Positions 809 to 18,636 of a stretch of DNA of 64,000 nucleotides are shown here, one piece after another; within the stretch, counting starts at the first letter, position 1, and every line of letters begins with the position of its first letter. Under the pieces are notes generated by a model that saw only the letters and a list, made by a program, of their open reading frames with translations, was not told where the DNA came from and ran no database searches. The stretch comes from Obrimoposthia wandeli (taxonomy: Eukaryota), in assembly GCA_977020255.1 (NCBI GenBank), contig CDROCS010004142.1:1-64000 (forward strand), given 5' to 3'. Both the position numbers and the translations under genes were made by a program.

Positions 809-813
809 GCCGC

Positions 814-1560: not shown

Positions 1561-1566
1561 AAGGTC

Positions 1567-3373: not shown

Positions 3374-3398
3374 TACGCATAGATACATGTGATTTGAT

Positions 3399-3422: not shown

Positions 3423-3557
3423 ATGACCTTGTTGATCTCTCTCTATATAAACAATGCAGCAATAGTAAAGAATAAATGGGGTCAAATGAAGTGATATTGC
3501 ATTCTGGTGTTTTTTTGATCAATATGACATATCCTTGGTCAAGTTTTCAACATAATG

Positions 3558-3835
3558 GCCTTGGTAAGAAGATTGCACTAATCACAAACCACCCTGTGTA
3601 TAAAGCATTAGCGTCAAAAAGAAAAGAACGGCTACAAGCTTATATTTAATTGTTCGATCAGCAGTTAGCGGTACATACTATCCGAGAAATTAGAGATATG
3701 ACTAACAAGTCTTGGGTGTTAGGCGATGCAGGTTTTAAGCAGCAAATAGAAGAACAAACTACGAGGCGTTGCAGTCCATATCAGCGTGGCGGCGATCATA
3801 AATCGAATAAATATAAAGACGATAGAAAGCAGTAA
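3558..3835 (+). pseudogene. C-terminal remnant of a REP-associated tyrosine transposase (RAYT, IS200/Y1 superfamily)
   Basis: ALGK...LIT.HP.Y.AL...ER..AY then IR..TNKSWVLG...FKQQIE..T.RR..P..RGGD.KS, the typical C-terminus of gammaproteobacterial RAYT-like proteins; N-terminal HUH domain not found. Confidence 0.7.
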
Positions 3836-3849
3836 TGATCAGTATAGAT

Positions 3850-3874
3850 ATCAATTTACTCTGACCCTATTGAT
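3850..3874 (+). repeat. REP-like motif ATCAATTTACTCTGACCCTATTGAT
   Basis: Imperfect palindrome (ATCAAT/ATTGAT arms) just after the RAYT remnant stop codon. Confidence 0.9.
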
Positions 3875-3887
3875 TCCAAGAAAAGTG

Positions 3888-3993
3888 AGTGAGCCGACAC
3901 TTTTTTTACTTGAAAGCCCCGTAATATATAGGTTTAGCTACGGCTCACTTTTGTTTACAGTAAATAAAAGTGAGCCGTGCAAAAGTGAGCCGT
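3888..3993. promoter_or_regulatory. Cluster of AAAAGTGAGCCGT direct and inverted repeats (putative recombinase or protein binding sites)
   Basis: Copies at 3888-3896 (partial), 3940-3952 (inverted), 3966-3978 and 3981-3993. Confidence 0.6.
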
Positions 3994-4286
3994 TATTTTT
4001 ATACTTACTATAATAGACTGTTGGCACATAAGGCAGTTAACGGCCAAAAGCGGCAATATTGTAAGTGTTAATAATTTTTAAAAATCTAACATAAACGCGC
4101 ATTAATTTTATCATTATCATACATTGATTATAAAAATAGTGTTAATTAGGCATGAGACTAATATCGTGCGCGTTTACACTTGTAAAATTATAGAAACTAC
4201 CTCAATATCAATAATATAAGTATGAACAAAAATAAATAACGAGAAACTCGTTATTTTTACAAACGCGCATGCGTTCTGGAGAGTTA

Positions 4287-4715
4287 ATGGAAGATTCATA
4301 TAATTGGGAAATGATCTTGGGTATTTCAAGTTTTGTTATTGCTTTATGTGCCCTTTTCTTTTCTTTTTGGCAAGGACTGTTAATCAGAAAGCATAATAAG
4401 ATTTCATTTAGGCCGCTTCTAACCACTTGGCTCCACGAAGGAAAGAGTAATGGAAACTTTCAACTAGACTTAATAAATAATGGTCTTGGTCCTGCCATGA
4501 TAGAAAGTTATGAGGTTTTCCTAGATAATCAAATAATATCCGGAAAAGGTCTCGAACCGATGGATAAGCTAGTTAAAATATTGTTTGAAGGTTACAGGTA
4601 TCAACCTAATGTTGCCTATTTATCGTCCGGATATTCAATGTCTTCAAAAGAAAAGTGTGCTCTCATTTCTATTCAATTTAATGAAAGGCATGGCCTTCAG
4701 AGAACAATGGAGTGA
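4287..4715 (+). CDS. Hypothetical protein with N-terminal membrane anchor, cassette-like; C-terminus possibly truncated
   Basis: ILGISSFVIALCALFFSFWQG transmembrane segment followed by basic residues; ATG directly after GTTA. Confidence 0.65.
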   Translation: MEDSYNWEMILGISSFVIALCALFFSFWQGLLIRKHNKISFRPLLTTWLHEGKSNGNFQLDLINNGLGPAMIESYEVFLDNQIISGKGLEPMDKLVKILFEGYRYQPNVAYLSSGYSMSSKEKCALISIQFNERHGLQRTME

Positions 4716-4851
4716 TTAACGCGTAGACGCCGAATAAAGATATAAAGTCATTTTTACGAGAAATTCTCTATGGATTCTGCGATTAATTGTGTACAAGAAA
4801 ATTCAGTTAGCACAGAAGCTTGTAGCGTTAGGCAGCTGGAGTAGTCAGAAA

Positions 4852-5686
4852 ATGAAATCTCAAATACTTAGAAAGTTTGAGTCAAAGCTTGAAGATATGA
4901 ACGACCAACTATGTTATTTTTTGTTTTCAGATGTTGAAGTTAAAAATATATTTTCTGCACTAGAACAAGATGTTTCAGGCTCGTTTACAACAGAAGCATT
5001 CTCTGAAAACAAGTTTTCAGAGCGTCTTCATATCAAAATTGAAGCGTTGCCTAAATTCCGTGATAAAAGCATTCACTCTGAGCATGAGTGTTGTAAATCG
5101 ATCGAATTTGTGCAGCTATTTAAAGGGTATTGAAGAATTTCGAGCAAATATAATACCTTCGACCCATGACCAAATAAATGATAAAAAACCGGAAGAACAG
5201 TTAAAACTTAAATTGACTAACTGGCTGGGTAAAGAGCCTGAAGTTGAAATTATTAAAACAATTAAATACTTAAGGTTACGACGAAACCACATAGCGCATG
5301 TTCGAGAAGAGTTGAGTGATGGGTACCGTTCAATGATTAAGCATGATTCACATCATTTAAATAATTATTGGGAAAAACAAGCAGCAAAATTAAATGGATT
5401 CGACTTTACCAAAAATAGTTACGCAGAATTTGAAGTTAATGAAGTATTTGCATTAATTAATTTAGCGAGAATTTGCATGCGAGAGGTTGATTCATCAGTT
5501 TTATCAAGTATACCCGAAGAAATAATCGCTAGTTATGAACTTCCATTTTTTCTTAGAAGTAAAAAGCTTAATGGCTTAAAAATAAATGTAAAATCACGCA
5601 AGTTTAATGCTTTTTTACAAGGTAAATACGGAAGCAAAATATCATGCGCTGACACTTTAATCAGAGCTCATTTTGAAAAGACCTAA
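4852..5686 (+). pseudogene. Integron-type cassette gene with HEPN-like RNxxxH motif, one frameshift
   Basis: GTTAGGC at 4827, GGAG RBS, ATG 4852; the frames join if one A is removed near 5065-5068; LRLRRNHIAH motif; stop codon lies inside the attC inverse core CCTAAC. Confidence 0.7.
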
Positions 5687-5766
5687 CAGGTTACTCAAAT
5701 GGTCTCTAAGCGCTTGACTAAGATTCACTTTATCCAACTATATCGCGCTGCTTAGTAGCGTTAGGC
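5681..5766 (+). mobile_element. attC recombination site (86 bp)
   Basis: ACCTAAC inverse core containing the gene stop, inner gcgctgcttag arm, and core site GTTAGGC followed by RBS and start of the next ORF. Confidence 0.8.
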
Positions 5767-5780
5767 AATAAGGAGCTACA

Positions 5781-6457
5781 TTGTTTTTACCTCTATCGGC
5801 ATGGATCAAAGCAACACACCCGTTACCTAAAAGGTTCTTGCTACAAAACTATACTGACCAGTTTAACGAGAGCTGGCTATGCTGGGTCGTACTGGAAGAA
5901 GTGTCTGAATTGTATGAAGTAAATAAACTGACGTGGGTTTCTCTAAGCGCATCAAGAAAAAAACTAAAGAATATATTTCGAAAGCCGGAGCTGTAGTTGG
6001 TGAAATTGATGATGATGGATGGCTAGATAAAGAGGAGGGATTCTGGATTAAAGAGGAATTGGGGAACCCTCCTCACCCATGTTTACCGATCTATATCATT
6101 ACAGTAGGTAGTGGTGATAATGAACGCGTTGTTTATATTGGAAAAACAAAAAGCGCATCTAGGTTTACTGGAGGTCATTCGGCTGCTTTAAAACTACATG
6201 CTCCGGAATATAAAGGTCTAGAAAAATCAATTTATAGGTGTTCAGTCTGGTTGGATATTGAAGATGAATATGTTGCTATTGATTGGATAGAACCAGAAAC
6301 TCTAGCCCTAGATATTTTCGACTGTGTAGAGTCTCAATTAATTTATGACTTGCAACCAGAGCTTAACGTTGAAAAGCGGGCAAAGGTGAGTGGCAAACAT
6401 CTTCTTGATAGGATACATATTTCAAAGGCGCTCGCCATCTGCAAACTAAAATCCTAA
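5781..6457 (+). pseudogene. Cassette gene encoding a GIY-YIG-like nuclease, frameshifted
   Basis: AAGGAG RBS, TTG 5781, frameshift near 5935; PIYIIT...VVYIGKT....RF..GH and downstream ESQLI fit GIY-YIG motifs. Confidence 0.6.
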
Positions 6458-6524
6458 ATGATCACTTTATTTTTGCAGAACAAGAACTTTAATCGATAAA
6501 AAACAGTAGCTATTTCGCTCCGCC

Positions 6525-6566
6525 ACATAATCATAGTCGCCAGTTTTGCCGCTTAAATGAGCTTTA
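6525..6566 (+). mobile_element. Degenerate, internally deleted attC
   Basis: acataa...gccgcttaaatgagcttta resembles attC arms; the core GTT is mutated. Confidence 0.35.
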
Positions 6567-7071
6567 TTCTTCCCTATAAATGTCTACTTTTCACCAAAGA
6601 GAGGTTTCTATTGCATGACCATCCCCTAAAGCTCATGAATGATGAACCACGGGTGTCGTAAACTCGCGATTTCCGTGAATTTTCGGGTTTATGGCTAGCC
6701 ACCGCCACCGGTAAAGATCCAACCCTTTGTATTTACAAGTAATATAGTACTGGTTACAGTGGCTATTCATATAACCGGATAATGCAAAACAGTAGCCAGT
6801 GGCAATCATGGCCATTATCAGCTCCAGTCAGAAAATAATACCATATTGAATGGGATAAATATTTGAGTATAGAGTTCTAAACAATACTTATTAGGCTTTA
6901 TCTAGTAGGTGTAATCATAAAAAGTCTTATGGTTAGCACTCCAGACCATTCAAAGGCCCTCTAATATGAGACGCTTGGGCTCTTTGTGTAACTACTAGAC
7001 ATTTATTTTTAGTTAATTTTTGAGCGCTGGATTCTAGTTTTTTGGCAAATAGTTTTACAGTATTTCTTTAA

Positions 7072-7095
7072 ATCAATTTACTCTGACCCTATTGA
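7072..7095 (+). repeat. REP-like motif copy
   Basis: atcaatttactctgaccctattga, identical to 3850-3873. Confidence 0.92.
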
Positions 7096-7125
7096 ATTCA
7101 AAATCAATCTGCCTTCGTCTTATCT

Positions 7126-7184
7126 GCCTAATAAAAGTTATTTAGCTAAGCACCGCGCTTTAGGTGTTTTTAAATAGGTTATAC
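7126..7184 (-). mobile_element. Degenerate attC (59 bp) on the minus strand
   Basis: Minus strand GTATAAC...taaagcgcggtgcttagct...ATTAGGC just after the stop codon; a GTTAGGT core lies 6 nt upstream of this gene's ATG (7999-8005). Confidence 0.5.
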
Positions 7185-7191
7185 ATTCTCA

Positions 7192-7992
7192 CTATAGCTG
7201 CTTTATAATATCAGGGTTAGCAATCCTCTTAATCACAGCGCCCGAAGGTATCTCTAAGATAACTGACTCTTTACCATTGTAAAAAGCTACTCGTTTATCG
7301 TTTAGTGCAACTAAGACGCCCTTATGCAGTAGGTTGCCTTTAGAATCGTTTAGTTGCGAGCAGTTGCTCCACAAAGCATCTTCCTTGTATAAACATTCTC
7401 CATTTTCTCTATAACTAGCTATTGCATTATTTGCTTGAATTAAACCTTGAGACGCGCCTAGTATATAAACAGAAAACCAGATAATCATGAATATAAAAGG
7501 CACTGTAACTAGAAGGTACATTGTAGAAAAGGTCATTACCAAAAGGCCTATTAATCTTTTAATGTTTTTATGAAGCGAGGAGAAATAGCTCTGTATCCGA
7601 CTAGAAGTAGGTAGTTCACTCTTAAGCTTTGCTAAAAATTCTTTATCGTTAAGCAGTATAGAAATACAGATAGCCAAAGAAATCATAAATAATGTTACTA
7701 AAGCAGTAGCCGTAGTATTTGTGAATATAGTTTTGCTCTCATTCCAGATAGCAAGGAAGTTATAAGTAATAGCATTTGAAGCGCTTATGTAAGTGTCTTG
7801 TATGCTTAATGGGAAAGCGCTTGACTCAACACCAAATGCGCTGAGATATGCGCCATGGAAGCTGTTGCCTATTAAGTAGCTGACGAATGGGAATGATGCT
7901 AATAATATAATGATGGCAGCTTTAAAATTGATTCTACTGCCGGTTGGCTTTTCTTCTACTTCAGTTTCAATTTGTTGAACTTGCTCGCTCAT
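7192..7992 (-). CDS. Hypothetical multi-pass membrane protein (probable integron cassette gene)
   Basis: 266-aa intact ORF with 3-4 hydrophobic segments; bounded by GTTAGGT and a degenerate attC. Confidence 0.75.
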   Translation of the reverse strand: MSEQVQQIETEVEEKPTGSRINFKAAIIILLASFPFVSYLIGNSFHGAYLSAFGVESSAFPLSIQDTYISASNAITYNFLAIWNESKTIFTNTTATALVTLFMISLAICISILLNDKEFLAKLKSELPTSSRIQSYFSSLHKNIKRLIGLLVMTFSTMYLLVTVPFIFMIIWFSVYILGASQGLIQANNAIASYRENGECLYKEDALWSNCSQLNDSKGNLLHKGVLVALNDKRVAFYNGKESVILEIPSGAVIKRIANPDIIKQL

Positions 7993-8123
7993 GTCTTTAC
8001 CTAACTAATGGAAATAAAATGCTCTTTTAAATCATATTGCCAAATAAAGCAATGGATCTTGTGAGAGGCAGAAGCGTCTATATAGTCAATCTCGTATCGA
8101 AATGGAATATCGTCTGGAATCAA

Positions 8124-8163
8124 AAATCAATTTACTCTGACCCCCGAATGGCCCTATTGATTT
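8124..8163 (+). repeat. REP-like motif copy with short internal insertion
   Basis: aaatcaatttactctgacccccgaatggccctattgatt. Confidence 0.88.
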
Positions 8164-8252
8164 TCATTAATGGACAGTGATCATTAGTTTTCAAATGCCG
8201 CTGGCTACTGACTCCATTGATTCTATTAGCCACTACATTTAGTGGCTTACTC

Positions 8253-8687
8253 TTATGTTGATCTTCGATGGCTTAAGCTGGCGGCGAGGTATGCGGCTTC
8301 TTGGTATTTTTTGAGCTTAGCAGGGCGTGAAAAAGGCTGCTTTTTATCAGCAGCTGCAATGGCTTGCCCAGTGATTAACTCAACCTCAACTATAGCGTTT
8401 AATTGAATGATTGCCTCCATTTTAAAAGAGATAGCACCACCTGCCATCGTGCCTTTTTTTGCACGCTTTTTAACCACTAGTTTTTCGATATTATGGCTTT
8501 GAATAAAGGTGGTGATAGCCTTGTGAAAATCGTTTATGCAAGCGACAGACTCATCATCTTCAAGCTCGATTTTGCGCTGCGCCAGTTCAATAAACTCTGC
8601 ATTATTACCCTCACCGTTATTATGGCAATCCAATAACACGAGAACTGCATGGGATGATTTGAGTTCAATGCCGCAAATACGTTTCAT
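8253..8687 (-). CDS. DUF3010 family protein
   Basis: M.RICGIELKS...KKRAKKG.MAGGA.SFKMEA.IQL motifs. Confidence 0.8.
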   Translation of the reverse strand: MKRICGIELKSSHAVLVLLDCHNNGEGNNAEFIELAQRKIELEDDESVACINDFHKAITTFIQSHNIEKLVVKKRAKKGTMAGGAISFKMEAIIQLNAIVEVELITGQAIAAADKKQPFSRPAKLKKYQEAAYLAASLSHRRST

Positions 8688-8716
8688 ATTTTTATCCTAA
8701 GCCTGTGAGGCAGTAG

Positions 8717-8938
8717 TTAGTTTTGATCAGTGTTTTTATGGAGCACCATGGCTTGATCGAAATTCTCGGTAATATCAGCCATTGTTTTGCGGTGCACAGG
8801 GCAATCCTTTTCTGTGTTGTGTATCCCGCGCCAGTTACCGCCAACTGGCTTTAAAGCTATTAAATATCCACTGTCTTCCTTTTCGGCGGCACTCATTCTG
8901 CGCTCTGCTATTTTAGTCACACAGCTTTCATAATGCAC
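8717..8938 (-). CDS. Small hypothetical protein
   Basis: 73-aa ORF upstream of and co-oriented with DUF3010; no family recognised. Confidence 0.35.
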   Translation of the reverse strand: MHYESCVTKIAERRMSAAEKEDSGYLIALKPVGGNWRGIHNTEKDCPVHRKTMADITENFDQAMVLHKNTDQN

Positions 8939-9189
8939 TAATATTTACAATCACTTAGCGTTAGAGTCTCAGCCCTCAGGTCTCATCTCTCAACTTACTA
9001 CAAAGCAACTTTGAAAATTCGAAACTTATAGCTCAAATATTATTCATCGAATACTAGGATTCTGATAGATAGATCCAAAAAACATTTTATATTAGTAATT
9101 GTTAATATAACTTGGCTTATAGAGTAATTAGGCTACAGTAATTAAGAGTAAAATATAAATTAACTCTGATATAACACAAAGAGGCAAGT

Positions 9190-9747
9190 ATGAAACACAA
9201 ATTTATAAAAATGGCTGCCTGTGCAGCTCTATTGACAAATGCGATGATAGGTAGTGCTTTTGCGGATGATAAACGTAATTTTGTTTACTTTCAGTGTGAT
9301 ACAAAAAATGAGAATGGTGCCATTATTTATTCACGTATTAGTAATATTTACACTTATCAAGGAGATGGCTATAGAGGTGATCAGTTGATAAGTAATGGCA
9401 AAATAAAAGCTATATTTGATGGCTTGCCTTATGAGTCGGATACTGGGTTACATTTAACAACTCAAGGAAAAATTAAATGTAGTTCAAATAAAGAAAACGA
9501 TAGATCGATAGGTAGCGTACTGTCCTATTTTATCAAATCATATTCGCATGAGTTTGGTGGTTATAAAACCCCATATGATGTGTTTGAAGGATTTCATAAG
9601 AAATCTGAGTACATCGCAGGGCTAAAAGAGCTTCGAGAGTTACGGGTGGAACCTTTAATAAAATATTCGTATATCAAATTTGAAAGGATGGGCGTTACTG
9701 GTGCTGCCGGAGATAAGGTAATTAAGCTTACTAGCGTTGTTGATTAA
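9190..9747 (+). CDS. Exported hypothetical protein
   Basis: GAGG RBS; signal peptide MKHKFIKMAACAALLTNAMIGSAFA. Confidence 0.75.
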   Translation: MKHKFIKMAACAALLTNAMIGSAFADDKRNFVYFQCDTKNENGAIIYSRISNIYTYQGDGYRGDQLISNGKIKAIFDGLPYESDTGLHLTTQGKIKCSSNKENDRSIGSVLSYFIKSYSHEFGGYKTPYDVFEGFHKKSEYIAGLKELRELRVEPLIKYSYIKFERMGVTGAAGDKVIKLTSVVD

Positions 9748-9917
9748 TATAATTACATGGTTTATTTGGTTATGTTGGGTAATTAAAAAAAACAATTTTC
9801 TTAGCTAACGCTCTTGGTTTGCTAATTTACTCGTACCTAACAGTAGTTGTAGTGATTAATTGTCAAATAGCGACAGCATAAACATCTGTATAAATTACCA
9901 AAAAAATACGACATACA

Positions 9918-9959
9918 GATCAATAGGGTTAGATCAATAAGCTCAGAGCAAATTGATTT
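9918..9959 (-). repeat. REP-like motif copy (reverse, partly duplicated)
   Basis: Reverse complement aaatcaatttgctctgagcttattgatctaaccctattgatct. Confidence 0.7.
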
Positions 9960-10137
9960 ATAACCCTTTGCTTAAACCTACTTCTAACTGCTGGCAATAC
10001 CTAGCTGTTTGGCTATCTGAGCTATTATTCTTTAAAATCATGAGTCCCATTGTCAATATTTAAATGAATGGCAATGGGGGCTCGTATAATCAGCTCAGTT
10101 AATAAACCTACTTCTATTCCAATTAGCTCTCTATTAG

Positions 10138-10290
10138 CCTCTATATCAGCGCTATCCATCAGTAAGCTTGCATAACACCCGCTATTACCAATAGGTCATG
10201 ATGGCTGCCTCGCTCTAAAATATTACCTTGGTTTAGCATTAAGATTTAGTTTGAATGTTGAATAGTACTTAGGCGTTGCGCAATCGCGAT
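10138..10290 (-). pseudogene. Decayed copy of the 3' end of the ABC transporter gene at 14709-16506
   Basis: Hand alignment to 14747-14900 gives about 129/154 identities; translates IAIAQRLSTIQHSN*ILMLNQGNILERGSHHDLL with a stop and a 1-nt gap. Confidence 0.9.
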
Positions 10291-10522
10291 CTTCCCTATA
10301 TCTACCTTTCTTTCTTTCTACCTCAAGTTCTGCCTATCTCCAATTCTCTTTACCTCCAATTCTACCTATTACCTCACTATTAATTATATTCATGTAGATC
10401 TGAAAATAATGAGTTTTACTAATTAACTGACCTTGCATATGATTAGCTCACGTTGTAATTGATAAACACATTGATTGGAGCGCTAACAGAACACTCATTA
10501 ATCGAGTACTGAGGAGATTTCC

Positions 10523-11230
10523 ATGCAAACTGATCATCTAGTAAAAAATGCAAATACTAACCGCGACCTTGAAACACGTTTAGCCGCTCAAGGTGTGTTA
10601 ACGTCAACTCGCGTTACTTGCAATGATTTACAGGCTGTATCAATAATGACAATGGATGCTCAGGTCGATCAGTTAGTGGTTCAGTTTGAACAGCAGCTAA
10701 AGCAAGGTAGCGACATTATTGAAGTTAACTTAACGTCTTCAGATACTGCAGATAAAGTCTGTGAGAAGGTTGCATTTTCTTGCTTAAAGGCAGCGAGAGT
10801 TGTGGCTAATTCTGCCTCTATTGCTTCAATTAATTCACCGACTACAACACAAGCGAAGCAACAGCCGTTATTGGTAAGCCTTGAGTTAGAAGCTAGTGCA
10901 TTGAATATTCCTCAACACAAATTGCATCATCTATTGCTGACGGCTCAGGCCCAAGGTGCTGACTTTGTAACCGTGAGCGATATTGTTGATGTAGGTGTGG
11001 CTAAAAGATTGATTTTTGCCGGTGATATGGTTGATGTGCCTGTGGTATTAAGTTTGCACCAGCAAGCTTTACAAGCTCAAGGGCATTGCGCAATAGAGCT
11101 TAGTCAGCAGTTATACCAAGCAGGTGCTGCCGCTGTCGGTGTTGAGGGTTATATTGGCCCACAAAATACTGATTCAGTTGATACTCACTGCTGGTTAACA
11201 GATAAGCGTGGATCACTGTATATCCACTAA
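10523..11230 (+). CDS. Divergent homocysteine S-methyltransferase-like protein lacking the Zn ligands
   Basis: GSDIIEVN, GADFVTVSDIVD, PVVLS and GAAAVGVEGYIGP echo the HMT barrel, but GxNC and terminal GGCC are absent; GAGGAG RBS. Confidence 0.5.
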   Translation: MQTDHLVKNANTNRDLETRLAAQGVLTSTRVTCNDLQAVSIMTMDAQVDQLVVQFEQQLKQGSDIIEVNLTSSDTADKVCEKVAFSCLKAARVVANSASIASINSPTTTQAKQQPLLVSLELEASALNIPQHKLHHLLLTAQAQGADFVTVSDIVDVGVAKRLIFAGDMVDVPVVLSLHQQALQAQGHCAIELSQQLYQAGAAAVGVEGYIGPQNTDSVDTHCWLTDKRGSLYIH

Positions 11231-11297
11231 GAGACCCAGGCTTTGAGTGTGCTTTGTTGCTGATCGAGATTAATCAGCACAAGCAGCTTGATGCGCT

Positions 11298-11810
11298 CTA
11301 TTTGTAATAGCCGAATGATTTTTTAAATTCAAGCAGGTTGCTGTTATCTATTTGGCTATCTGCTATGAATGTTTGCGAGACATGGAAATCTATACATTTT
11401 CCTGCTCTGTAGCCGTAATAATTAGCGTTATGTTGTATGAGCTTTTGACCTTTATATGTACCTTTGACTGAATAGGTAACGATTGAAAATGGCTCAGAAG
11501 GGCTGATTTTAATAGTATCTTTTTGTATGTTTGGATTTTTTGCAGAAAGTGCCCAGTAGTACTTCATGCACTGCGAACTTGTAGAGCCTTTGCCTTGAGC
11601 TGGTTCAACAAAACCTGAAAGATTGAAGCCCACCTTAGTTGATGCTTTAAGTTGGTAATCAGTAGGTGAAGCGCTACCTCGTTGCTTGACAAGCTTTGGC
11701 GAGTTAAATTCAAATCCCCAAGTTTCACCTGGCACCATGAAAATACTACTGGCATGCAGTGCTGGCGAAAGCGTTGCTAATGCGAAGACTAAAAATTTTT
11801 TCATCATCAA
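11298..11810 (-). CDS. Exported hypothetical protein
   Basis: Signal peptide MKKFLVFALATLSPALHA; two Cys; intact ORF. Confidence 0.75.
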   Translation of the reverse strand: MMMKKFLVFALATLSPALHASSIFMVPGETWGFEFNSPKLVKQRGSASPTDYQLKASTKVGFNLSGFVEPAQGKGSTSSQCMKYYWALSAKNPNIQKDTIKISPSEPFSIVTYSVKGTYKGQKLIQHNANYYGYRAGKCIDFHVSQTFIADSQIDNSNLLEFKKSFGYYK

Positions 11811-12117
11811 TCCTTGATAGTTTTAAGGCAAATTTACCTGCAGGTTCCTTAGGTCAATTCAATAAAAAGTGAATAAGCCATTAACATTTGCCTGCTTAGA
11901 GCGTCAATACTGCAATATTTTTAACGGGTTTACTAGCAGGCTATTGAATCTAAGGCCAGACCCTAAGATAAAAGTCTAAGATAAAAGTCTAAGACAAGAA
12001 TTTAAAAGAAGAGCTTAAGGTGCACTCATAAAGTGATGGCCGTGTATCAATCTGTATCTAGCGCTAGTGCATAAAGGAGTGCTTACTGTATGTGTAGAGC
12101 TGTTTTACACTATGAAA

Positions 12118-12162
12118 ATGTCGTATGTTTGCATTGAATATATGTCGTATGTTTGCTATATT
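12118..12162 (+). promoter_or_regulatory. Sigma70-like promoter overlapped by 15-bp direct repeats (putative autoregulatory operator)
   Basis: ATGTCGTATGTTTGC at 12118-12132 and 12142-12156; TTGAAT(12134)-17 nt-TATATT(12157). Confidence 0.65.
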
Positions 12163-12187
12163 TAAATGTAATAGTTGAGGGGGTATC

Positions 12188-12586
12188 ATGACGATTGCAA
12201 ATAGAGTGAGGACAAGGATTAATCGTTCAAAACGCTATGTTTTCGCACGTGCCGATTTTTCGGATATTGCAGGGTATGACCAAGTCGGTCGAGAATTAAG
12301 AAAACTCGTTAAAATCGGCTTGTTGCTGCGCATTGCTTATGGTCTTTACACCAAAGCTAGAATCAATAGTATTACTGGGGAGATTATGCCTGCATCACCT
12401 AGTGGTGCTGATGGTGTGATTTTAGAAGCTATTAAAAAACTTGGTGTTGATTATAGGTTTGATGATTTCTCCCAGCAAAGTATTAATGGAAGTAGTTTAC
12501 AAATACCTGCGTCATTTGAAATTATTACCAGTAATCGATTTAAGCGTAAAATTGTAGTTAGCAATCGAGCTGTTAATGCGGGTTGA
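12188..12586 (+). CDS. AbiEi-type antitoxin / DUF6088-like transcriptional regulator
   Basis: VF.R.DF.D...YDQVGR.LR.LV..G.L.RI.YG.Y winged-helix signature; overlaps the start of the AbiEii gene. Confidence 0.8.
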   Translation: MTIANRVRTRINRSKRYVFARADFSDIAGYDQVGRELRKLVKIGLLLRIAYGLYTKARINSITGEIMPASPSGADGVILEAIKKLGVDYRFDDFSQQSINGSSLQIPASFEIITSNRFKRKIVVSNRAVNAG

Positions 12587-13472
12587 TAAAAATACTTTCA
12601 TTGAAGTTTCTGATGCCTTAGAAATGGGCAACCGCTTATTGCTTATTGTTTGTCACAGTTTACTGCTTTGTCATAAATCGTTTTTCATTGATCTTCACCG
12701 AATGTCAGAAGATGTTGATATTAAGATGATCCCACAACATGCATTTGAAGAATCAAGCTCAAGAGGTGCCCGTAAAAAAGCTAGAAAACAAAATTATCTA
12801 GCGGTTGTTAAGCGAATAAAAGAAAGTAGCTTTTTCTCTATTGAAGGTGAGCCGACTTGTCGAGATGAATATAGATACCAGGTTATTGATGTTTGTTATC
12901 CGCAGTCACATACAATAGCACCATGTTTGAGACCTTTTATAAAACTAGAGTTAATTGAAACCCTGCTTTACGATGAAATTCAATACCGACCTATAACATC
13001 ATTAACAGCAAAAGCTTATAAAGAAAATGCTGAAATAGATGCGATGGCATTTACGAGTATATTGAGTACTCAAACGGAAAAAATAATCTCAATGCTTAGA
13101 CGCACTGCTAGCTTTTATAGAGATAATAATAGAAGTGAAGATCCAGCGTTAATTCGTCATATTTATGATACGTTTCATATTCAAAACGCAGGTGAAGCAG
13201 ATGTTGCCGAGATCATACCGCTGATTAAAGAAGTCATCATTGATGATGTGAAACGATTCGGAAATCAACACACTCAATTTGTTAATGATCCAATTTCTGA
13301 ATTGAAATTTGCGTTGAAACTGCTTGAAGAAAACAGTGAATTTGAAGATAGATTCAACCAATATGTTGTGCCAATGGTGTATGGCAGGGGAGTAATTACT
13401 TGGGCTGAAGCATTCGATACTTTTAAAAAAACTGTCAACGCTGTGTTTGAAGAATTAGATAAAAGCAGATGA
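12576..13472 (+). pseudogene. AbiEii-family nucleotidyltransferase toxin, N-terminal catalytic segment disrupted
   Basis: RMSEDVDIK, PFIKLEL, EKIISMLRR and RHIYD motifs are present, but the EKDY and GGT motifs expected before RMSED are replaced by out-of-family sequence. Confidence 0.7.
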
Positions 13473-13541
13473 ACCACAGTTGCTACTACTCACATGGTAA
13501 ATGTCTCCTCATCACTCCGGCGGTAAGCTGGCACTATTGAT

Positions 13542-13597
13542 CTGCCTCGCTCTATAATCTTACCTTGGTTAGCACTAATATTTAGTCAATCAGAATG
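13542..13597 (-). pseudogene. Second, shorter decayed copy of the ABC gene 3' end
   Basis: ctgcctcgctctataatcttaccttggttagcactaatattt...cagaatg aligns to 14815-14867. Confidence 0.8.
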
Positions 13598-13826
13598 CCC
13601 TTATCTAGCGATAAGGTATGAAGTGACAGTGCATAAAGCAGCTCTTACGTATAAAAGGTCATAGAAAACTGATGTTTTGTTTTTTGCCACGAGTTCTAGG
13701 TTTATAAGCTCTACTTAAAATTTAATACTTAGAAGGTATAATAAAGGTTAAATGTTTGGCTAGATTAACTGATAAACAAGGTCAGATTAGCGGTCGTTAT
13801 GGCTTGTGTGATCAAATAATAATTAT

Positions 13827-14219
13827 TTAATCTTCTGATTTCTTAGAGGGATTGGTAGGCACGACTTTATTTTCTACCAATGAGTACGATGTAATAGCCG
13901 CACGGTTTTCAATCAAAACAGCGGCGTTGTCATGCTGACTGTAGCGTTGAGCATTGTGAATGAATAAGGCTAAATTATCTTGGTATTGCATTTTGCGTTC
14001 AGCATCATTTTGATTGTTCAGATCAATAAAGCTTTGATTATCAAGCTCAGAAGAAGATAGCTGTTGAGCCTGTTTACTAATTTTGACTGTATCTTCAATG
14101 GCTATAGGCGCCGCTGCATCTGGAGTATTGTTTAATTGGGGCTGCTGGGTTTTGTGTATTGTGCTGATTGTTACATTACTGGAGATTAACATAATGATGC
14201 TACCTATTTTATATCTCAA
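13827..14219 (-). CDS. Hypothetical protein
   Basis: 130-aa ORF with DTVKISKQAQQL-type low-complexity motif; start uncertain. Confidence 0.5.
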   Translation of the reverse strand: MRYKIGSIIMLISSNVTISTIHKTQQPQLNNTPDAAAPIAIEDTVKISKQAQQLSSSELDNQSFIDLNNQNDAERKMQYQDNLALFIHNAQRYSQHDNAAVLIENRAAITSYSLVENKVVPTNPSKKSED

Positions 14220-14331
14220 GCAGAGTGTTAATAGAGCTTAGAGTCATGTGAATTTTCGTGCTTTACATGGTAATTTATACGCAGCTAGCATTTTATAGAT
14301 TCAATTAGTTGAAAAATCTAGCTTCAATCGT

Positions 14332-14580
14332 TTGGTTTTAGATGAAGCAGAGGATTTAAAAGCGATATCTATTCGCATGCAGAACTCGCTAATTGATGAT
14401 TTAAAATTAATAGCAAAAATAAACGGGCTAGATTATCAGCCACTCATTAAGCAAGTGCTGTTGCGCTTTGTTGACGCTGAGAAAAAGCAGTGGTTAAAAG
14501 CAGCAGCCAGTGCAGTGGAAGACCAGCAAAAAGAGAGCCGAAATGAAGGGGAGTTAAGCGACAAATGCGTAGTTGCTTGA
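14332..14580 (+). CDS. CopG/RHH-type antitoxin-like protein, probably 5'-truncated, no toxin partner
   Basis: ISIRMQ.SLIDDLK.IA..NG..YQPLIKQVL.RF motif. Confidence 0.6.
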   Translation: MVLDEAEDLKAISIRMQNSLIDDLKLIAKINGLDYQPLIKQVLLRFVDAEKKQWLKAAASAVEDQQKESRNEGELSDKCVVA

Positions 14581-14598
14581 CCTTTGATTTAAGTAATT

Positions 14599-14623
14599 AG
14601 CCTCGCCTATAGCGAGGCTTTTT
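14599..14623 (+). terminator. Rho-independent terminator
   Basis: agcctcgc-ctata-gcgaggct followed by a T run. Confidence 0.8.
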
Positions 14624-14708
14624 ATAGATATGGAAGATGCATTACCTACGATTCGTGATGGGCATCAATAAGCTCAAAGCTAATCAATCCTACCCTCAAG
14701 CATCAACC

Positions 14709-16506
14709 TCAAGCATCAACCCCAGGTATCAGCAACGTCTCATCATCCTCTATATCAGCTCCATCCGTCAGTAAACGTGCATAAACACCCGCCATTGCCA
14801 GTAAATCATGATGGCTGCCTCGCTCTACAATCTTGCCTTGGTTGAGTACTAAGATTTGATCAGAATGTCGAATGGTACTTAGGCGGTGAGCAATCGCGAT
14901 AACGGTCTTTTCTTCAAACAAACGTCCAATGGCTTTCTGAATTAAATTCTCGGTAATGGAGTCTACTGAGCTGGTGGCTTCATCTAGCATCATCACTTGT
15001 CCGCCTTGCGCTACTGACCGTGCAAAGGAGATTAGCTGAGCTTGGCCTGCCGATAAGTTACTGCCATTGTTTTTTAGCTCAAAGCGGTACTGATCTGCTA
15101 GGTCTAAAATAAAGTCGTGGGCATAAACGTATTCAGCGGCGTCGATCACGGCGTTGTCTGTAATTTCTTGAGCGCCTAGAGAGATATTAAAATGGATATC
15201 CTTTTCAAACAGAAATACATCTTGTTGCATCAAGGAGAACAAGTGCAGCATTGAGTCTTTGGGAATGCTTGATAGTTCAATACCGTTGAGTTCAATGCTG
15301 CCTTGGTAGTGCATGTAGGTTTTATTCATGATGCGAATGATGGTTGATTTACCTGAACCTGTGGTGCCGACTAAAGCTAATTGTTCGCCTTTTTTTAGCA
15401 TAAAGGACACATCATCTAAAACGTAGGGGCCTGTACCGTTATATTGAAAACGCACATTTTTGAATTCAAGAGTCTCAAAATTAGCCAGCTTATCTTTTAA
15501 TGACTCTGCTGATAAAAGGGCTAGCCCTTGTTCTTCTAAATCTTCTACAAAAAGCTCTTCAATGTGTTCAAAGGCTGCAAAAGAGCGCTGTATGGAGCGT
15601 TGAGGGTGAGAAGTCGCACCTTGTGCAATTTACTTTTCTAAGGTATTGATGAAGGCGATCAATACACCAAGGCGGCTCTAAACCCCGCCAGCACGCGCCT
15701 TTGCTGACCCGCGCAAATGTGGGTCCGATGGTGATGGAGGTTATGCCCGTTATTACCGAGAATAAGCTGGCATCGTACTTATTAGTTTTTAATTGCGCGC
15801 GTAAAAAATCTTCGGTGTAACGATGATACTTAGCTTCTACTTCTGCCTCGGCACCATACAATTGCACTGTTTTTACACCTAACAAACACTCTTGTAAAAA
15901 GCCTGTGCTTTTGGCTAAAGATGAGCGGGTAATAATATACATTTTACGTAGGCGATTGCGCACATACTGGGTCAGCATCAACACCGGAGGAAACACCAGC
16001 AAGACTAACAGGGCTAATTGCCAGTTAATGAAAAACATAAATATGAGTACGGCTAACGTATTGATTGAGTCTTTCACCAAGCTCAGCACACCCAACACAA
16101 ACGAGTCACCTATGACTTCTAAATCGCCGGTTAAGCGTGACAACGTAACACCGGTGGGTGTTTTGTCATAGTAGGTTCTGGGCAGTTTTAAAACGCGCTC
16201 AAACAAGGCCATACGAATATCAAAAATAGCCTTTTGACCGGTTATACGCAAACAATAAGTGTAGATGGCATCGGCAATGTAGTTGACGATTAATACCACC
16301 AACATGATGGTAATTAGCATCATCAACCCATCGTATTTTCCCGGTGTAAGGTGCTCATCAATCACTTGAATCACTAGCCAGGGGAACATCAAATTAGCCA
16401 GCACTGATATTGGCATCATTAACAAACCAATGATGGCCGTTTTTTTGTAGCGTGATGCATAGTGAAAGAAATGTTTGAGGTATTTTACATCAAGAGATTT
16501 AATCAT
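14709..16506 (-). pseudogene. ABC exporter permease/ATPase subunit (MdlB-like), reading frame broken at about 15590-15730
   Basis: N-terminal TMD ORF 15568-16506 plus NBD ORF with GTTGSGKST, LSAGQAQ, LDEATS and AHRLST; LGVLIAFINTLEK is recoverable in another frame at the junction. Confidence 0.85.
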
Positions 16507-18371
16507 GAGGCGCTCTCCGACTCATTGTGCTCGCTTGGCTTCTTATGTTGCTCGCTTTGCACTTCATGGCGCTGTAATTCCCAAGTTTGGCGGTAATAGC
16601 TAGATGACTTAAGTAGTTGAGCGTGAGTGCCACGTGCGATGATTTCACCGTGCTCTAATACCAAAATATTGTCCATGTATTCCAATGCGCTAACGCGATG
16701 AGAGACCACCAATAAACTCTGGCCTTGCATGCGCTTGAATACTCCTTTTAGAATTGAGCGCTCAGTGTCGTAATCAACAGCTGATAGCACATTATCCATA
16801 ATGATAAGATCGCAAGGAGTGAGTAGGGCACGGGCGATGCTCAGGCGTTGCTTTTGACCACCTGATAGCATGATGCCTTTTTCACCGACTAAGGTTTGAT
16901 CTCCCGCGCTAAAGCGTTGCACATCATCACTTAACTGACTGAGGTTGAGTACCTGTGCTACGTCGAGATCAGTTTTGTCTTGAGCTTGGCTTTGGTCTTG
17001 CTGCTTGGCTCCGAATGTTACGTTTTCAGCAAGGGTGTCGGAAAACAAAAAAGGCTCTTGGGTAATGGTACGCACATAGCTGCGCCAATCTTTACGTGAC
17101 ATCAGTGTGATGTCTTGATCACCCCAAAAAATTTGCCCCGTTTCAAGAGATAAGTGATGATTCAAACAATTTACTAAGGTGCTTTTTCCTGAACCAATAC
17201 TGCCCAAAACGCCGACCTTTTCGCCCGCTTTGATAGAGAAACTTAGGTTCTTTAGCACCCTGTCACTAAGGCTGCTTTTAGAATCAGAACTAGAATCAGA
17301 ACTAGAATCAGAACTAGAATCAGAATAGCTATAACTGAGGTTTTTTACTTCAAGGGTAGATCCTCGCAAGGCGGCTTTTTCAGTATCGCTCATGGTTAGC
17401 ATATCAGTGCTGGGTATTTCGTTATTGAGAATACTCTGCACGCTATCAATACTGATCATACCCATTTGATAAACGGTGACAATACGGCCTAAGTGCATCA
17501 GCGGTAGCGCTAATAAGACGGAGTAAGATAAAAACGCAGTAATCTCGCCGATCGACAGTTGTGCCTGTAAAAGATAGTAACCACCGAGTCCTAAAATGAG
17601 CACTTTCATGAAGTGGTTGGCGTAATCCAAAATAGGCATAAAGAAGGTTTGGATTTTGGCAATTTTCATCGTGCACTCAAACAGGCGCTGGTTTACCTTA
17701 GCGACTTCGCTGGTGGCCCAATCACCCATTTGCTGATTCTTAATCAAATCAATGCCTGATAAATAGTTCATCAGTTGCTCAGATAAGTTCTGCAGGCATT
17801 TCAATCGCTGCGCTTGTAAGGCGCGTAATTTTCGATAACCGAGCCAAAAAATAACAGAAGCAGTAATGATTGGGATGACAGAGTACATCGTTAGTTGTGG
17901 AGAAATTCTCCACATCCAAATCGGGGTAAGAGAAAGGGCAAATAAAATATTAAAAAACTGTAAAAAACCAATGCCATAAAACAAGCGAATACCGGTGAGG
18001 TCATTATTGATAATAGAGATAAGTTTGCCAGAGGCATATCGCTGATGAAAAGTTGAAGGTAGACGATTTAAACGATGAAATACATCATTTTTTAAAGTTG
18101 CTTCTGTCATGCGTCCAGGATTTAACGCGTACATACGCGACAAAATGCGGATCACTACCATGACCACTGATAGCCCAATCACCCACTGTACGTTTTCAAG
18201 TAAACCGGCTTTTGATTCAATCGTTGATTGATTGAGTAAATCTACCGCAAGCTGGATGTAGCGCGGAATTTCTACTTGCAGATAATTCACCACAAAAATA
18301 CACACAACCGCAAACAAATATGAATATTTGTTCAACATTAAGTAGTGAATTATAAATTTTGATTTAGTCAT
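16503..18371 (-). CDS. ABC exporter permease/ATPase subunit (MdlA-like)
   Basis: TMD plus GSIGSGKST, LSGGQKQR and SHR motifs; coupled to the downstream subunit. Confidence 0.92.
   Translation of the reverse strand: MTKSKFIIHYLMLNKYSYLFAVVCIFVVNYLQVEIPRYIQLAVDLLNQSTIESKAGLLENVQWVIGLSVVMVVIRILSRMYALNPGRMTEATLKNDVFHRLNRLPSTFHQRYASGKLISIINNDLTGIRLFYGIGFLQFFNILFALSLTPIWMWRISPQLTMYSVIPIITASVIFWLGYRKLRALQAQRLKCLQNLSEQLMNYLSGIDLIKNQQMGDWATSEVAKVNQRLFECTMKIAKIQTFFMPILDYANHFMKVLILGLGGYYLLQAQLSIGEITAFLSYSVLLALPLMHLGRIVTVYQMGMISIDSVQSILNNEIPSTDMLTMSDTEKAALRGSTLEVKNLSYSYSDSSSDSSSDSSSDSKSSLSDRVLKNLSFSIKAGEKVGVLGSIGSGKSTLVNCLNHHLSLETGQIFWGDQDITLMSRKDWRSYVRTITQEPFLFSDTLAENVTFGAKQQDQSQAQDKTDLDVAQVLNLSQLSDDVQRFSAGDQTLVGEKGIMLSGGQKQRLSIARALLTPCDLIIMDNVLSAVDYDTERSILKGVFKRMQGQSLLVVSHRVSALEYMDNILVLEHGEIIARGTHAQLLKSSSYYRQTWELQRHEVQSEQHKKPSEHNESESAS
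17281..17325. repeat. In-frame 12-bp tandem repeat GAATCAGAACTA encoding an SDSS linker
   Basis: Three full copies and one partial copy. Confidence 0.95.
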
Positions 18372-18636
18372 TACTATCTAAACCTTCCTTGTTTGTAGGT
18401 AGATCGGTTATAGGTGGATTGTTCATAGATGGATGATTGATAGATGGATGATTGATAGATGGATGTTGTGCAAGGCAGGCATCGATAATCAACTCTCTAG
18501 GGTCTCCTTGTTCACTCAATTGCTCGAGTAACCATTCAGGCAACCGAATGGGTTGAGTTTTTACACCGGGCTTGCGACCGCAACCGCTTCGCTTGCCGCC
18601 ATGATCACAGCAACCGTCATTAAATTTATTGGGCAT
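18364..18636 (-). CDS. Small putative DNA-binding protein (GGxRxGxGRK motif)
   Basis: HGGKRSGCGRKPG...IRLP; GGAGG-type RBS upstream; overlaps the ABC start codon. Confidence 0.6.
   Translation of the reverse strand: MPNKFNDGCCDHGGKRSGCGRKPGVKTQPIRLPEWLLEQLSEQGDPRELIIDACLAQHPSINHPSINHPSMNNPPITDLPTNKEGLDSND
18425..18465. repeat. 15-bp tandem repeat ATAGATGGATGATTG encoding PSINH repeats
   Basis: Two full copies and one partial copy. Confidence 0.92.

What the first reader, a model, noticed from the sequence alone, without database searches (positions are those of the whole stretch)
10138..14900. Three staggered copies of an ABC-gene 3' end: likely scars of serial integration into a coding sequence
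The last ~150 bp of the MdlB-like gene (14747-14900) recur downstream of the gene at 10138-10290 (about 84% by hand count, with a stop and a frameshift) and again at 13542-13597. The two decayed copies share variants (tacc, agca, atttagt). They bracket two cargo blocks: HMT-like gene, exported protein and AbiE pair; then hypothetical gene and antitoxin. Elements that integrate into a gene's 3' end are known to displace the old end in this way. An ABC exporter gene as a repeatedly used target would be unusual, and no integrase remains in the window. A weak shared motif (tatctagcg...agtgcataaag) near 12056 and 13602 may mark further module ends.
Basis: partly seen in the sequence, partly recalled or inferred. 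Interest (0 to 1): 0.7.

Follow-up and report, generated by a model that had tools for sequence, protein, structure and literature searches.

The report
Duplicated ABC-gene ends bracketing accessory genes
A bacterial ABC-exporter gene has had about 4.4 kb of defence and toxin-antitoxin genes inserted into its last 190 bases, leaving the old gene end and a second decayed copy behind as direct repeats. This is the usual scar of a genomic island, here without a recombinase and seen in no relative.

Summary
Window 10128-10290 (copy A) is 83% identical to the live 3' end of the MdlB-like gene (G, 14738-14900). Copy B (13490-13597) is a third copy with its own stop codon. All three derive from this gene, not from a paralog.

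Copy A runs on into about 130 nt homologous to the native flank downstream of mdlB in relatives, so it is the old end in its original place. Most A-G differences arose on A and are spread evenly over codon positions, which indicates pseudogene decay.

The serial-integration reading is only partly supported.
- For: the three-copy architecture matches PAISt at bacA, and an 8-bp palindrome ATCGCGAT lies at the upstream edge of G and A.
- Against: contig C4142 has no tyrosine-recombinase match. None of about 100 related mdlB loci has a duplicated end.
- Against: G is not foreign. There is no identity break at 14900, and A and G share derived sites.
- Against: A and B share a derived stop-creating change.

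The contig starts at window position 1, so the far side of the accessory region is unseen.

Best reading (about 0.45): an integrase-less island relic. Main rival (about 0.33): recombination-driven duplicative insertion. This would be an ordinary kind of feature at a new target gene. One tool, the look-up of encoding contigs, was closed.

The parts
16503..18371 (-). MdlA-like ABC exporter half (622 aa, intact), upstream partner of the target gene
   Evidence: Pfam ABC_membrane plus ABC_tran. It is 79-87% identical to orthologs in Osedax symbiont Rs2 and in Nitrincolaceae/Oceanospirillaceae MAGs.
14709..16506 (-). MdlB-like ABC exporter gene, the target. In this assembly it is broken by at least four frame switches clustered at about 15600-15755. 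The NBD part (14709-15455) is an open 248-aa frame with a native-like C-terminus.
   Evidence: Three-frame translation compared with the L006 ortholog; Pfam; tblastn against relatives.
14709..14900 (-). Copy G: the live 3' end (H-loop to stop codon), the reference copy of the repeat. The palindrome ATCGCGAT lies at 14893-14900.
   Evidence: Identity to relatives is 82-85%, the same as the gene body.
14598..14720 (-). Flank of copy G. It holds a 13-nt tandem duplication across the stop codon (14708-14720 and 14695-14707), a degenerate REP-like motif (14663-14690) and a G+C-rich terminator hairpin (14598-14619). It lacks the native hairpin flank.
   Evidence: Sequence; folds; 21-nt match 14664-14684 to 9933-9953. 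The REP-like piece also lies after mdlB on C2735.
13598..14580 (.). Module 1. It holds a 5'-truncated CopG/BrnA-like antitoxin remnant (ORF 14332-14580, +) and a 130-aa hypothetical gene (13827-14219, -).
   Evidence: Pfam CopG_antitoxin, E 2e-4 and below the curated cut-off. 14305-14404 is 86% identical to the BrnA remnant that follows mdlB on C2735, where BrnT is intact. The hypothetical gene has a 57% homolog elsewhere in genome G190.
13490..13597 (-). [quoted passage not shown] The core is 13542-13597. A scrambled 26 nt lies at 13516-13541. The tail and its own TGA lie at 13490-13515.
   Evidence: Run X1 has 67 nt of mdlB-like sequence in place of the 26 nt. It shares the derived ACTAAAT with copy A.
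12118..13472 (+). Module 2: AbiEi (12188-12586) and AbiEii (12576-13472), with two 24-nt direct repeats upstream (12118-12165). AbiEii lacks about 21 N-terminal residues compared with homologs.
   Evidence: Pfam and PADLOC. Homologs are 317-319 aa. Run X1 has 115 letters where the window has 52 at 12633-12686. Repeat family D8.
12010..12091 (-). Possible fourth, very decayed junction copy (C). 12066-12091 resembles the arm upstream of B (13628-13652), and 12010-12062 weakly resembles B.
   Evidence: Shuffle tests give p about 0.01 and about 0.03; blastn E 0.095. Marginal.
10291..11810 (.). Module 3. It holds a 235-aa protein of unknown function (10523-11230, +) with a conserved leader from about 10372, a 170-aa exported protein (11298-11810, -), and a CT-rich spacer (10291-10371) abutting copy A.
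   Evidence: No Pfam or PADLOC hits. Homologs of the 235-aa gene (38-66% aa) lie elsewhere in five family genomes, not near mdlB. Atlas leads are weak and TIM-barrel-like.
10105..10290 (-). Copy A: the displaced ancestral 3' end, with an in-frame TAA, a 1-nt deletion and a lost stop codon. The palindrome ATCGCGAT lies at 10283-10290.
   Evidence: 25 A-derived changes are spread evenly over codon positions (phase corrected by hand, see the report).
9933..10104 (-). Native flank retained after copy A. It holds a hairpin (10047-10079) and adjoining sequence homologous to the mdlB 3' flank of L006/L007/L008/L011, a 14-nt exact repeat (10103-10116 and 9973-9986), and a REP-like hairpin (9933-9959).
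   Evidence: Alignments; folds with z -2.6 and -4.8; motif family at 1450, 3848, 7070 and 9933; 14-mer.

Best explanation
This is the relic of one or more small genomic islands that recombined into the last ~190 bp of the MdlB-like gene.

How it works. The incoming DNA carried its own copy of the gene's 3' end, running from the H-loop codons at 14900 to the stop. The gene therefore stayed full length (copy G). The resident end with its native flank was pushed 4.6 kb downstream (copy A), where it has decayed as a pseudogene.

The internal copy B, and perhaps a fourth scar C, divide the insert into modules of 1.3-1.8 kb. These carry a BrnA remnant with a hypothetical gene, the AbiE pair, and an exported protein with an unknown protein. 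This is what tandem accretion of att-flanked elements produces. The recombinase has been lost, or it lies beyond the contig end. What remains is an integrase-less, CIME-like array that is now decaying along with its target gene.

Shown: the repeats; their common origin from this gene; the ancestral context of A; the neutral decay of A; the accessory nature of the cargo; the lack of a tyrosine-recombinase match on the contig.

Inferred: that the recombination was site-specific, that it happened more than once, and that the ATCGCGAT palindrome marks the crossover.
For: - Direct repeats of the gene's 3' end flank accessory cargo.
- Copy A continues into about 130 nt homologous to the native mdlB flank of four relatives. 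Copy G's flank lacks that sequence.
- G keeps an open NBD frame with a native-like tail.
- 25 of the 32 polarised A-G differences arose on A and are evenly spread over codon positions, as expected for a displaced dead end.
- B is a near-complete end followed directly by other cargo. It runs from 14867-equivalent to its own stop codon and is longer in a sister strain.
- The homology of G and A starts exactly at an 8-bp palindrome. There are 3 in 64 kb against 0.59 expected, and two of them are these.
- The cargo is TA and Abi genes of lower G+C, 35-40% against 43-44% in mdlAB.
- Cargo homologs sit in unrelated contexts in relatives.
- A second bacterium of the same assembly also has a BrnTA remnant right after mdlB.
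- Precedent: PAISt has three copies of the bacA 3' end (138-141 bp) delimiting modules, with an 8-bp palindromic crossover. Its sedentary relatives keep only integrase remnants (PMC4057263).
Against: - Contig C4142 has no Phage_integrase match, and the intergenic gaps are too short for a sizeable remnant.
- No duplicated 3' end in about 100 related mdlB loci, and no window cargo in any of them. A recombinase family that targets this site therefore has no other witness.
- G is not foreign. There is no identity step at 14900, and A and G share derived sites (14751, 14756) absent from 17 relatives.
- A and B share the derived, stop-creating ACTAAAT. This fits copying of an already dead end better than a once-working B.
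- B does not clearly reach the palindrome. 'ACC-TTATCGC' gives p about 0.085.
- G's flank (REP-like piece plus BrnA) is shared with C2735 at the same identity as the gene. It may therefore be old and vertically inherited rather than newly brought in.
- No empty-site or excision joint was seen in the one public run.
Confidence: 0.45

Rival explanations
1. Recombination-driven duplicative insertion without a dedicated integrase. DNA from a sister lineage carried the mdlB 3' part plus a different downstream neighbourhood (REP-like piece, BrnTA and so on, as on C2735). It entered either as a circle by a single homologous crossover (Campbell type), or as a linear piece by homology-facilitated illegitimate recombination. 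This duplicated the shared segment. B and C then arose by further recombination or copying among the repeats.
For: - A and G were nearly identical at the start. Only 7 G-derived changes stand against 25 evenly spread A-derived ones, and the two share unique derived sites.
- There is no identity step at 14900.
- The duplicated segment may run past the stop codon into the REP-like motif: 14664-14684 matches 9933-9953 at 19/21, score 32 against a shuffle maximum of 28.
- B shares a derived change with the dead copy A.
- B and C share the non-mdlB arm as well.
- The event is private to this lineage.
- G's flank matches the arrangement on C2735, a bacterium of the same sample.
- The genome is rich in REP-like repeats and broken genes.
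Against: - Campbell-type insertion of chromosomal circles is rarely documented in nature (my own knowledge).
- It needs a prior event that made the circle, or an illegitimate join placed exactly at a palindrome.
- It does not by itself explain modules of similar size that each begin with a copy of the end.
Confidence: 0.33
2. In-situ segmental duplication. The cargo was already the resident neighbourhood of mdlB. The segment from 14900 to past the stop codon was copied downstream once or several times by replication slippage or unequal exchange, and later decayed.
For: - All copies are this lineage's own sequence.
- The BrnA adjacency to mdlB is shared with C2735, so it may predate the duplication.
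- A and B share a derived change.
Against: - Copy A, not G, carries the flank found after mdlB in four relatives. That is the opposite of what a downstream copy should carry, unless the flank was copied too and then deleted next to G.
- No similarity exists between the cargo and the DNA beyond A, so a tandem duplication needs an extra exact deletion.
- The cargo genes lie elsewhere in relatives.
Confidence: 0.12
3. Assembly artefact or chance similarity. The repeats would come from a collapse or chimera of two co-resident strains' mdlB ends, or from conserved ABC motifs.
For: - The assembly holds at least two related bacteria with this gene.
- mdlB has a suspicious cluster of frame switches.
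Against: - Independent short-read contigs of run X1 cover B plus module 1 plus G with 0-1 differences, and also cover the A junction bins.
- E-values are 1e-10 to 7e-43.
- The copies are decayed with indels and are not strain-like variants.
- The mdlA NBD and other ABC genes give no DNA match.
Confidence: 0.03

Closest known systems
PAISt and PAISs1/PAISa1 of plant-pathogenic Streptomyces, integrated at the 3' end of bacA (PMC4057263)
   Same: Three direct copies of a protein-coding gene's 3' end (138-141 bp there, about 110-190 bp here) delimit modules of accessory genes. The gene-proximal copy completes the gene. An 8-bp palindrome sits in each copy there, and at the edge of two copies here. 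Sedentary versions there have lost a working integrase.
   Different: PAISt has a proven tyrosine recombinase, or recognisable remnants of one, next to the distal copy. It also has proven excision and transfer. Here no recombinase or remnant is found, the modules are 1.3-1.8 kb rather than 105-569 kb, the copies are strongly decayed, and no second genome shows the site in use.
CIMEs and tandem accretion of ICEs/IMEs, for example ICESt1/ICESt3-related elements (reviewed in PMC5704250; the fda 3' end as their target is from my own knowledge)
   Same: Elements that have lost their integration and transfer genes but keep attL and attR. [quoted passage not shown]
   Different: Those arrays are recognised because related functional elements with integrases use the same site in other strains. 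That evidence is missing here. In addition, the internal copy B looks derived from the dead copy A.
Prophage e14 at icd in E. coli, and SGI1 at trmE
   Same: The integrating element brings a surrogate 3' end for a protein-coding gene and leaves the old end as a pseudogene fragment at the far junction.
   Different: In those cases the surrogate end differs from the host end mainly at synonymous sites, and the integrase is present. Here nearly all differences are neutral decay of the old end, and no integrase is seen.

Membership tests
Genomic island / integrative element at a gene's 3' end (attL/attR direct repeats) | Direct repeats made of the target gene's 3' end flank the inserted DNA, and the proximal copy keeps the gene complete | tested here: met
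   G 14709-14900 and A 10105-10290, 83%, E 7e-43. The NBD frame is open to a native-like stop codon.
Genomic island / integrative element at a gene's 3' end (attL/attR direct repeats) | The distal copy is followed by the native downstream flank of the target gene | tested here: met
   About 130 nt after copy A is homologous to the flank after mdlB in L006, L007, L008 and L011.
Genomic island / integrative element at a gene's 3' end (attL/attR direct repeats) | A site-specific recombinase (tyrosine or serine) is encoded at one end of the element, or a remnant of one | tested here: not met
   No PF00589 match on contig C4142 among 104 matches in the assembly. No Pfam recombinase in the cargo ORFs. 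Serine recombinases were not searched separately. The contig ends 10 kb beyond copy A, so a gene further out cannot be excluded.
Genomic island / integrative element at a gene's 3' end (attL/attR direct repeats) | The same site is occupied or empty in other genomes (recurrent use, variable cargo) | tested here: not met
   No second copy of the 3' end in about 40 genome loci, 59 metagenome loci and 9 family genomes. The only hint is that a BrnTA remnant also follows mdlB on C2735, without a duplication.
Genomic island / integrative element at a gene's 3' end (attL/attR direct repeats) | An identical crossover core is shared by all att copies at the same position | tested here: inconclusive
   ATCGCGAT lies at the upstream edge of G and A. 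B has only 'TTATCGC' followed by other sequence, p about 0.085.
Genomic island / integrative element at a gene's 3' end (attL/attR direct repeats) | Excision to a circle and an empty site | tested here: inconclusive
   One public run, contigs only, shows no 14900-to-10290 joint. The single 'goes back' joint is a longer form of copy B in a sister strain, not a circle junction.
Type IV toxin-antitoxin / abortive infection system AbiE | An adjacent AbiEi (DUF6088/AbiEi_4) gene and an AbiEii nucleotidyltransferase gene with overlapping ends | tested here: met
   PADLOC AbiEi 1e-47 and AbiEii 1e-84; Pfam PF08843 7e-15. The genes overlap at 12576-12586. AbiEii lacks about 21 N-terminal residues compared with 317-319-aa homologs.
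Integron cassette array (attC sites) | Cassettes are separated by attC sites with R'' RYYYAAC ... R' GTTRRRY in that order, and an IntI integrase is present | tested here: not met
   By my own reading of the sequence, the REP-like hairpins have the two arms in the opposite order to attC. There is no tyrosine recombinase match on the contig. The module separators are copies of a coding 3' end.

The most novel reading that the evidence does not exclude
The H-loop-to-stop segment of this MdlB-like gene could be a true attachment site for a family of very small, integrase-less defence and TA modules. These would be mobilised in trans and stacked in tandem in a population of marine, host-associated Nitrincolaceae-like bacteria. 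The copies would keep recombining with each other, which would explain why B looks like a mosaic of A-like and G-like parts and why it differs in length between sister strains.
Probability: 0.12. Interest if true: 0.5.

Novelty: new member of a known kind. Interest (0 to 1): 0.3.

Why it matters
If the site-specific reading is right, it adds an ABC-exporter gene to the short list of protein-coding genes whose 3' ends serve as island attachment sites. It would also show how TA and Abi cargo is stacked and then decays in a bacterium related to Osedax symbionts. If the rival is right, it is a clear natural example of a duplicative insertion made by general recombination that mimics att sites. That would be a useful caution for island-prediction tools that take 'direct repeat of a gene end' as proof of an integrase event. 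Either way this is a local, decaying scar, not a new kind of system.

Tried and rejected
**A different ABC paralog as the source of the copies: rejected.** A, B and G are each other's best matches in the window and in the whole assembly. They share lineage-specific states.

**A foreign origin of the live end: looked for, not found.** Identity to relatives is 84-85% in the body, 84-86% in the last 300 nt before 14900, and 82-85% after it.

**An integron cassette array or attC sites: rejected.** See the membership test.

**Xer/dif-like sites at the module ends: rejected.** I compared them by eye with the dif consensus recalled from memory and saw no convincing match.

**A restriction-type blunt cut at TCG/CGA inside the palindrome: rejected.** The homology starts at least 3 nt upstream of that centre.

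**A RAYT gene in the window.** An earlier scan note suggested one. No PF01797 match on C4142 at E up to 0.01. The REP-like hairpins themselves are real.

**Cargo on known plasmids or phages.** Only the AbiE pair matches, at 70%, on a Pseudoalteromonas replicon in an unrelated context. Nothing matches in phages.

**The far boundary of the island.** I searched for the Zn-peptidase that follows mdlB in L040, L009 and C2735. This bacterium has no ortholog in the assembly.

**Searches under 'relatives' of the window's assembly.** These were impossible because the assembly has no relatives in the collection. I used the family of locus L040's genome instead.

Full report
**Setting**

The window is the first 64 kb of contig C4142 in a 1.35-Gb, 6912-contig assembly that holds many bacterial genomes. 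The ABC genes here are 79-87% identical at protein level to those of Osedax symbiont Rs2 and of Nitrincolaceae/Oceanospirillaceae MAGs.

On the minus strand lie three genes:
- a small conserved ORF (18364-18636);
- an intact MdlA-like gene (16503-18371);
- an MdlB-like gene (14709-16506).

The MdlB-like gene is broken in this assembly. Against the L006 ortholog the frame switches at least four times between about 15755 and 15600. After that, a clean 248-aa NBD frame runs to a native-like C-terminus.

**The observation**

The repeats are real.
- Copy A (10128-10290) matches the live end G (14738-14900) at 82.9% over 164 columns with one 1-nt indel (E 7e-43).
- Copy B's core (13542-13597) matches G at 82% and A at 89%.
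- No further copy exists in the window.
- In the whole assembly the only other match is the ortholog of a second, related bacterium on contig C2735.

A has an in-frame TAA and a frameshift.

After 26 scrambled bases it continues into GATGAGGAGACATT, which matches G's tail (p 0.027), and ends at its own TGA at 13490-13492, 17 nt from the stop of the convergent AbiEii gene. Contigs of the one public run that holds this locus (X1, a sister strain) have 67 nt of mdlB-like sequence where the window has those 26 nt. Those contigs differ from the window by 0 to 5% from piece to piece. B was therefore once a near-complete end and is being eroded by deletions.

**Which copy is the old one**

Copy A continues past its lost stop codon into about 130 nt that align with the sequence following the mdlB stop in L006, L007, L008 and L011. 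This includes a hairpin, CCCATTG(T/C)CA...TGACAATGGG (fold z -2.6).

G's flank has none of this. It carries three other features:
- a 13-nt tandem duplication across the stop codon;
- a degenerate REP-like motif;
- a terminator hairpin.

So A is the ancestral end in its original place, and everything between 14708 and 10291 lies between the gene and its old end.

**Are the ends foreign?**

No.
- The window gene is as similar to relatives downstream of 14900 (82-85%) as upstream (84-85% in the body, 84-86% in the last 300 nt).
- A is closer to G (83.5%) than to any of 21 orthologs (79% or less).
- A and G share states at 14751 and 14756 that none of 17 relatives has, and several more that only one to three relatives have.

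I polarised the A-G differences with the relatives. 25 arose on A, 7 on G and 12 are ambiguous.

The script counted codon phase from the ATG at 16506, but the frame switches at 15600-15755 shift the phase. I therefore re-phased by hand from the 14709-15455 frame, using codon position = (15455 - x) mod 3 + 1. With that correction the A-derived changes fall 9, 7 and 9 on codon positions 1, 2 and 3. That is neutral decay.

The two ends were thus nearly identical when they separated. TTACC and AGCA are states that relatives also carry. ATTTAGT (ACTAAAT on the gene strand, which turns CAA into TAA) is a derived state shared by A and B alone.

**The cargo**

The insert has three modules.
- Module 1 (13598-14580). 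It holds a 5'-truncated CopG/BrnA-like antitoxin and a 130-aa hypothetical gene. On C2735 a complementary remnant follows mdlB in the same orientation: an intact BrnT plus a 3'-truncated BrnA. It shares 100 nt at 86% identity and a piece of the REP-like motif. There, however, nothing is duplicated. The next genes (Zn-peptidase, LysR, OYE) are syntenic with L040, which has a different 381-nt spacer.
- Module 2 (12118-13472). This is an AbiEi/AbiEii pair with two 24-nt direct repeats upstream. The AbiEii is N-terminally shortened.
- Module 3 (10291-11810). It holds a 170-aa exported protein and a 235-aa protein without family matches. Homologs of the latter lie elsewhere in five family genomes.

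The cargo's G+C is 35-40%, against 43-44% in mdlAB.

A possible fourth junction scar lies at 12010-12091. It resembles the arm upstream of B and, weakly, B itself (p about 0.01 and 0.03). I treat it as marginal.

**Is the site used elsewhere?**

I looked for a second copy of the mdlB 3' end downstream of the gene in three sets:
- about 40 species-genome loci with 5-8 kb of flank;
- 59 metagenome loci, 34 of them with 3 kb or more;
- 190 genomes of the family, 9 of which hold a clear ortholog.

There was none. No piece of the window's cargo lies in any of these loci.

What does recur is that homology among all relatives breaks about 30 nt before the stop codon, and each lineage has different DNA after the gene. 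The region after mdlB is thus variable, but a duplicated end is private to this lineage.

**Recombinases**

A Phage_integrase profile search of the whole assembly gave 104 matches, none on C4142. A Y1 transposase search also gave none on C4142.

The contig begins at window position 1, inside tandem 7-mers. DNA from 1 to 9930 is itself accessory: ParDE, a SAD/SRA-like ORF, DUF3010, REP-like hairpins and dispersed repeats. The far side of the accessory region is therefore unseen.

**Edges**

The homology of G and A begins exactly at the 8-bp palindrome ATCGCGAT (14893-14900 and 10283-10290). The window has three such sites against 0.59 expected. The palindrome encodes the IAIA just before the H-loop histidine. 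It is present in L006-L008 but altered in L040, C2735 and L009.

B shows only ACC-TTATCGC, followed by TAGATAAGGG, which resembles the DNA just upstream of A. Each is weak on its own (p 0.085 and 0.058).

**Reading**

The architecture is that of an island integrated into a gene's 3' end, with an internal third copy. The best precedent is PAISt. It has three copies of the bacA end (138-141 bp), an 8-bp palindromic crossover, modular excision, and sedentary relatives that keep only integrase remnants (PMC4057263). Decayed, integrase-less, att-flanked elements (CIMEs) and their tandem accretion are well described (PMC5704250). I take this as the best single explanation, at about 0.45.

Four findings hold it down:
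- there is no recombinase;
- no second genome uses the site;
- the live end was nearly identical to the old one at the start;
- B shares a stop-creating change with the dead copy.

These fit the main rival at about 0.33. In that reading, DNA from a sister lineage carried the mdlB end plus a C2735-like neighbourhood and entered by general recombination (a single crossover of a circle, or homology-facilitated illegitimate recombination). The segment from 14900 to past the stop codon was duplicated. The 19/21 match of the REP-like motif after both ends hints that the duplicated segment ran beyond the gene. Later exchanges among the repeats made B and C.

Pure in-situ duplication (about 0.12) fits poorly, because the native flank sits after A and not after G. 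An artefact is very unlikely (about 0.03), since independent short-read contigs carry the same junctions.

**Limits**

- Gene conversion between the repeats could blur the dating and the shared-site arguments.
- The 160-190-nt repeats give little phylogenetic power.
- Run X1 is contigs only.
- Serine recombinases were not searched for separately.

**Verdict**

This is a known kind of scar at a new target gene, and of low to moderate interest.

Noticed in passing
window 15600-15755 (-): The MdlB-like gene switches reading frame at least four times within about 150 nt and is otherwise clean. This is either a local pseudogenising decay or a low-quality or collapsed stretch of the assembly.
   Followed up: partly
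window 131-353 (also 1567-2281): A 205-220-nt element is present in dozens of copies, some in arrays with about 340-nt spacing, in related genomes G001-G004 and G184. Rfam gives a sub-threshold TwoAYGGAY RNA match (37.5 bits against a gathering score of 43) at 207-333 (-). Tandem 7-mers (ATAAGAC / GAACATA) flank it at 1-117 and 1479-1560.
   Followed up: partly
window 1450, 3848, 7070 (+), 9933 (-), degenerate at 14663-14690 (-): A REP-like hairpin motif, AAATCAATTTRCTCTGASCYTATTGAT, occurs four times in the window and also at scattered sites in G002 and G003. The copy at 9925-9970 folds with z -4.8. One copy lies after each of the two main mdlB ends.
   Followed up: partly
window 10103-10116 and 9973-9986; 14695-14720: A 14-nt exact direct repeat (TAGAAGTAGGTTTA on the gene strand) brackets the native hairpin flank after copy A. 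At the corresponding point after copy G there is a 13-nt tandem duplication across the stop codon and no hairpin. This looks like an insertion with a target duplication in one copy and a footprint in the other.
   Followed up: no
window 12118-12165: Two 24-nt direct repeats (ATGTCGTATGTTTGC...) lie just upstream of abiEi. They are likely operator sites for AbiEi autoregulation.
   Followed up: no
window 10372-10431: The leader of the 235-aa gene is conserved at 81-88% DNA identity in family genomes where the protein itself is only 38-55% identical. It is possibly a cis-regulatory element. No Rfam match.
   Followed up: no
G000:C2735:129950-130550 (loci L004/L055): A second, related bacterium in the same assembly has an intact BrnT and a 3'-truncated BrnA directly after mdlB, whose last codons are replaced. 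The window keeps the complementary 5'-truncated BrnA and no BrnT.
   Followed up: yes
window about 17240-17310 (mdlA, residues about 352-375): A serine/aspartate-rich simple repeat (SSDSSSDSSSDSSSDSKSS) sits in the linker of the MdlA-like protein. I did not check whether orthologs carry it.
   Followed up: no
window 12633-12686: Run X1's strain has 115 letters where the window has 52. This matches the roughly 21 residues missing from the window's AbiEii compared with 317-319-aa homologs. The toxin gene is probably damaged in the window's strain.
   Followed up: partly
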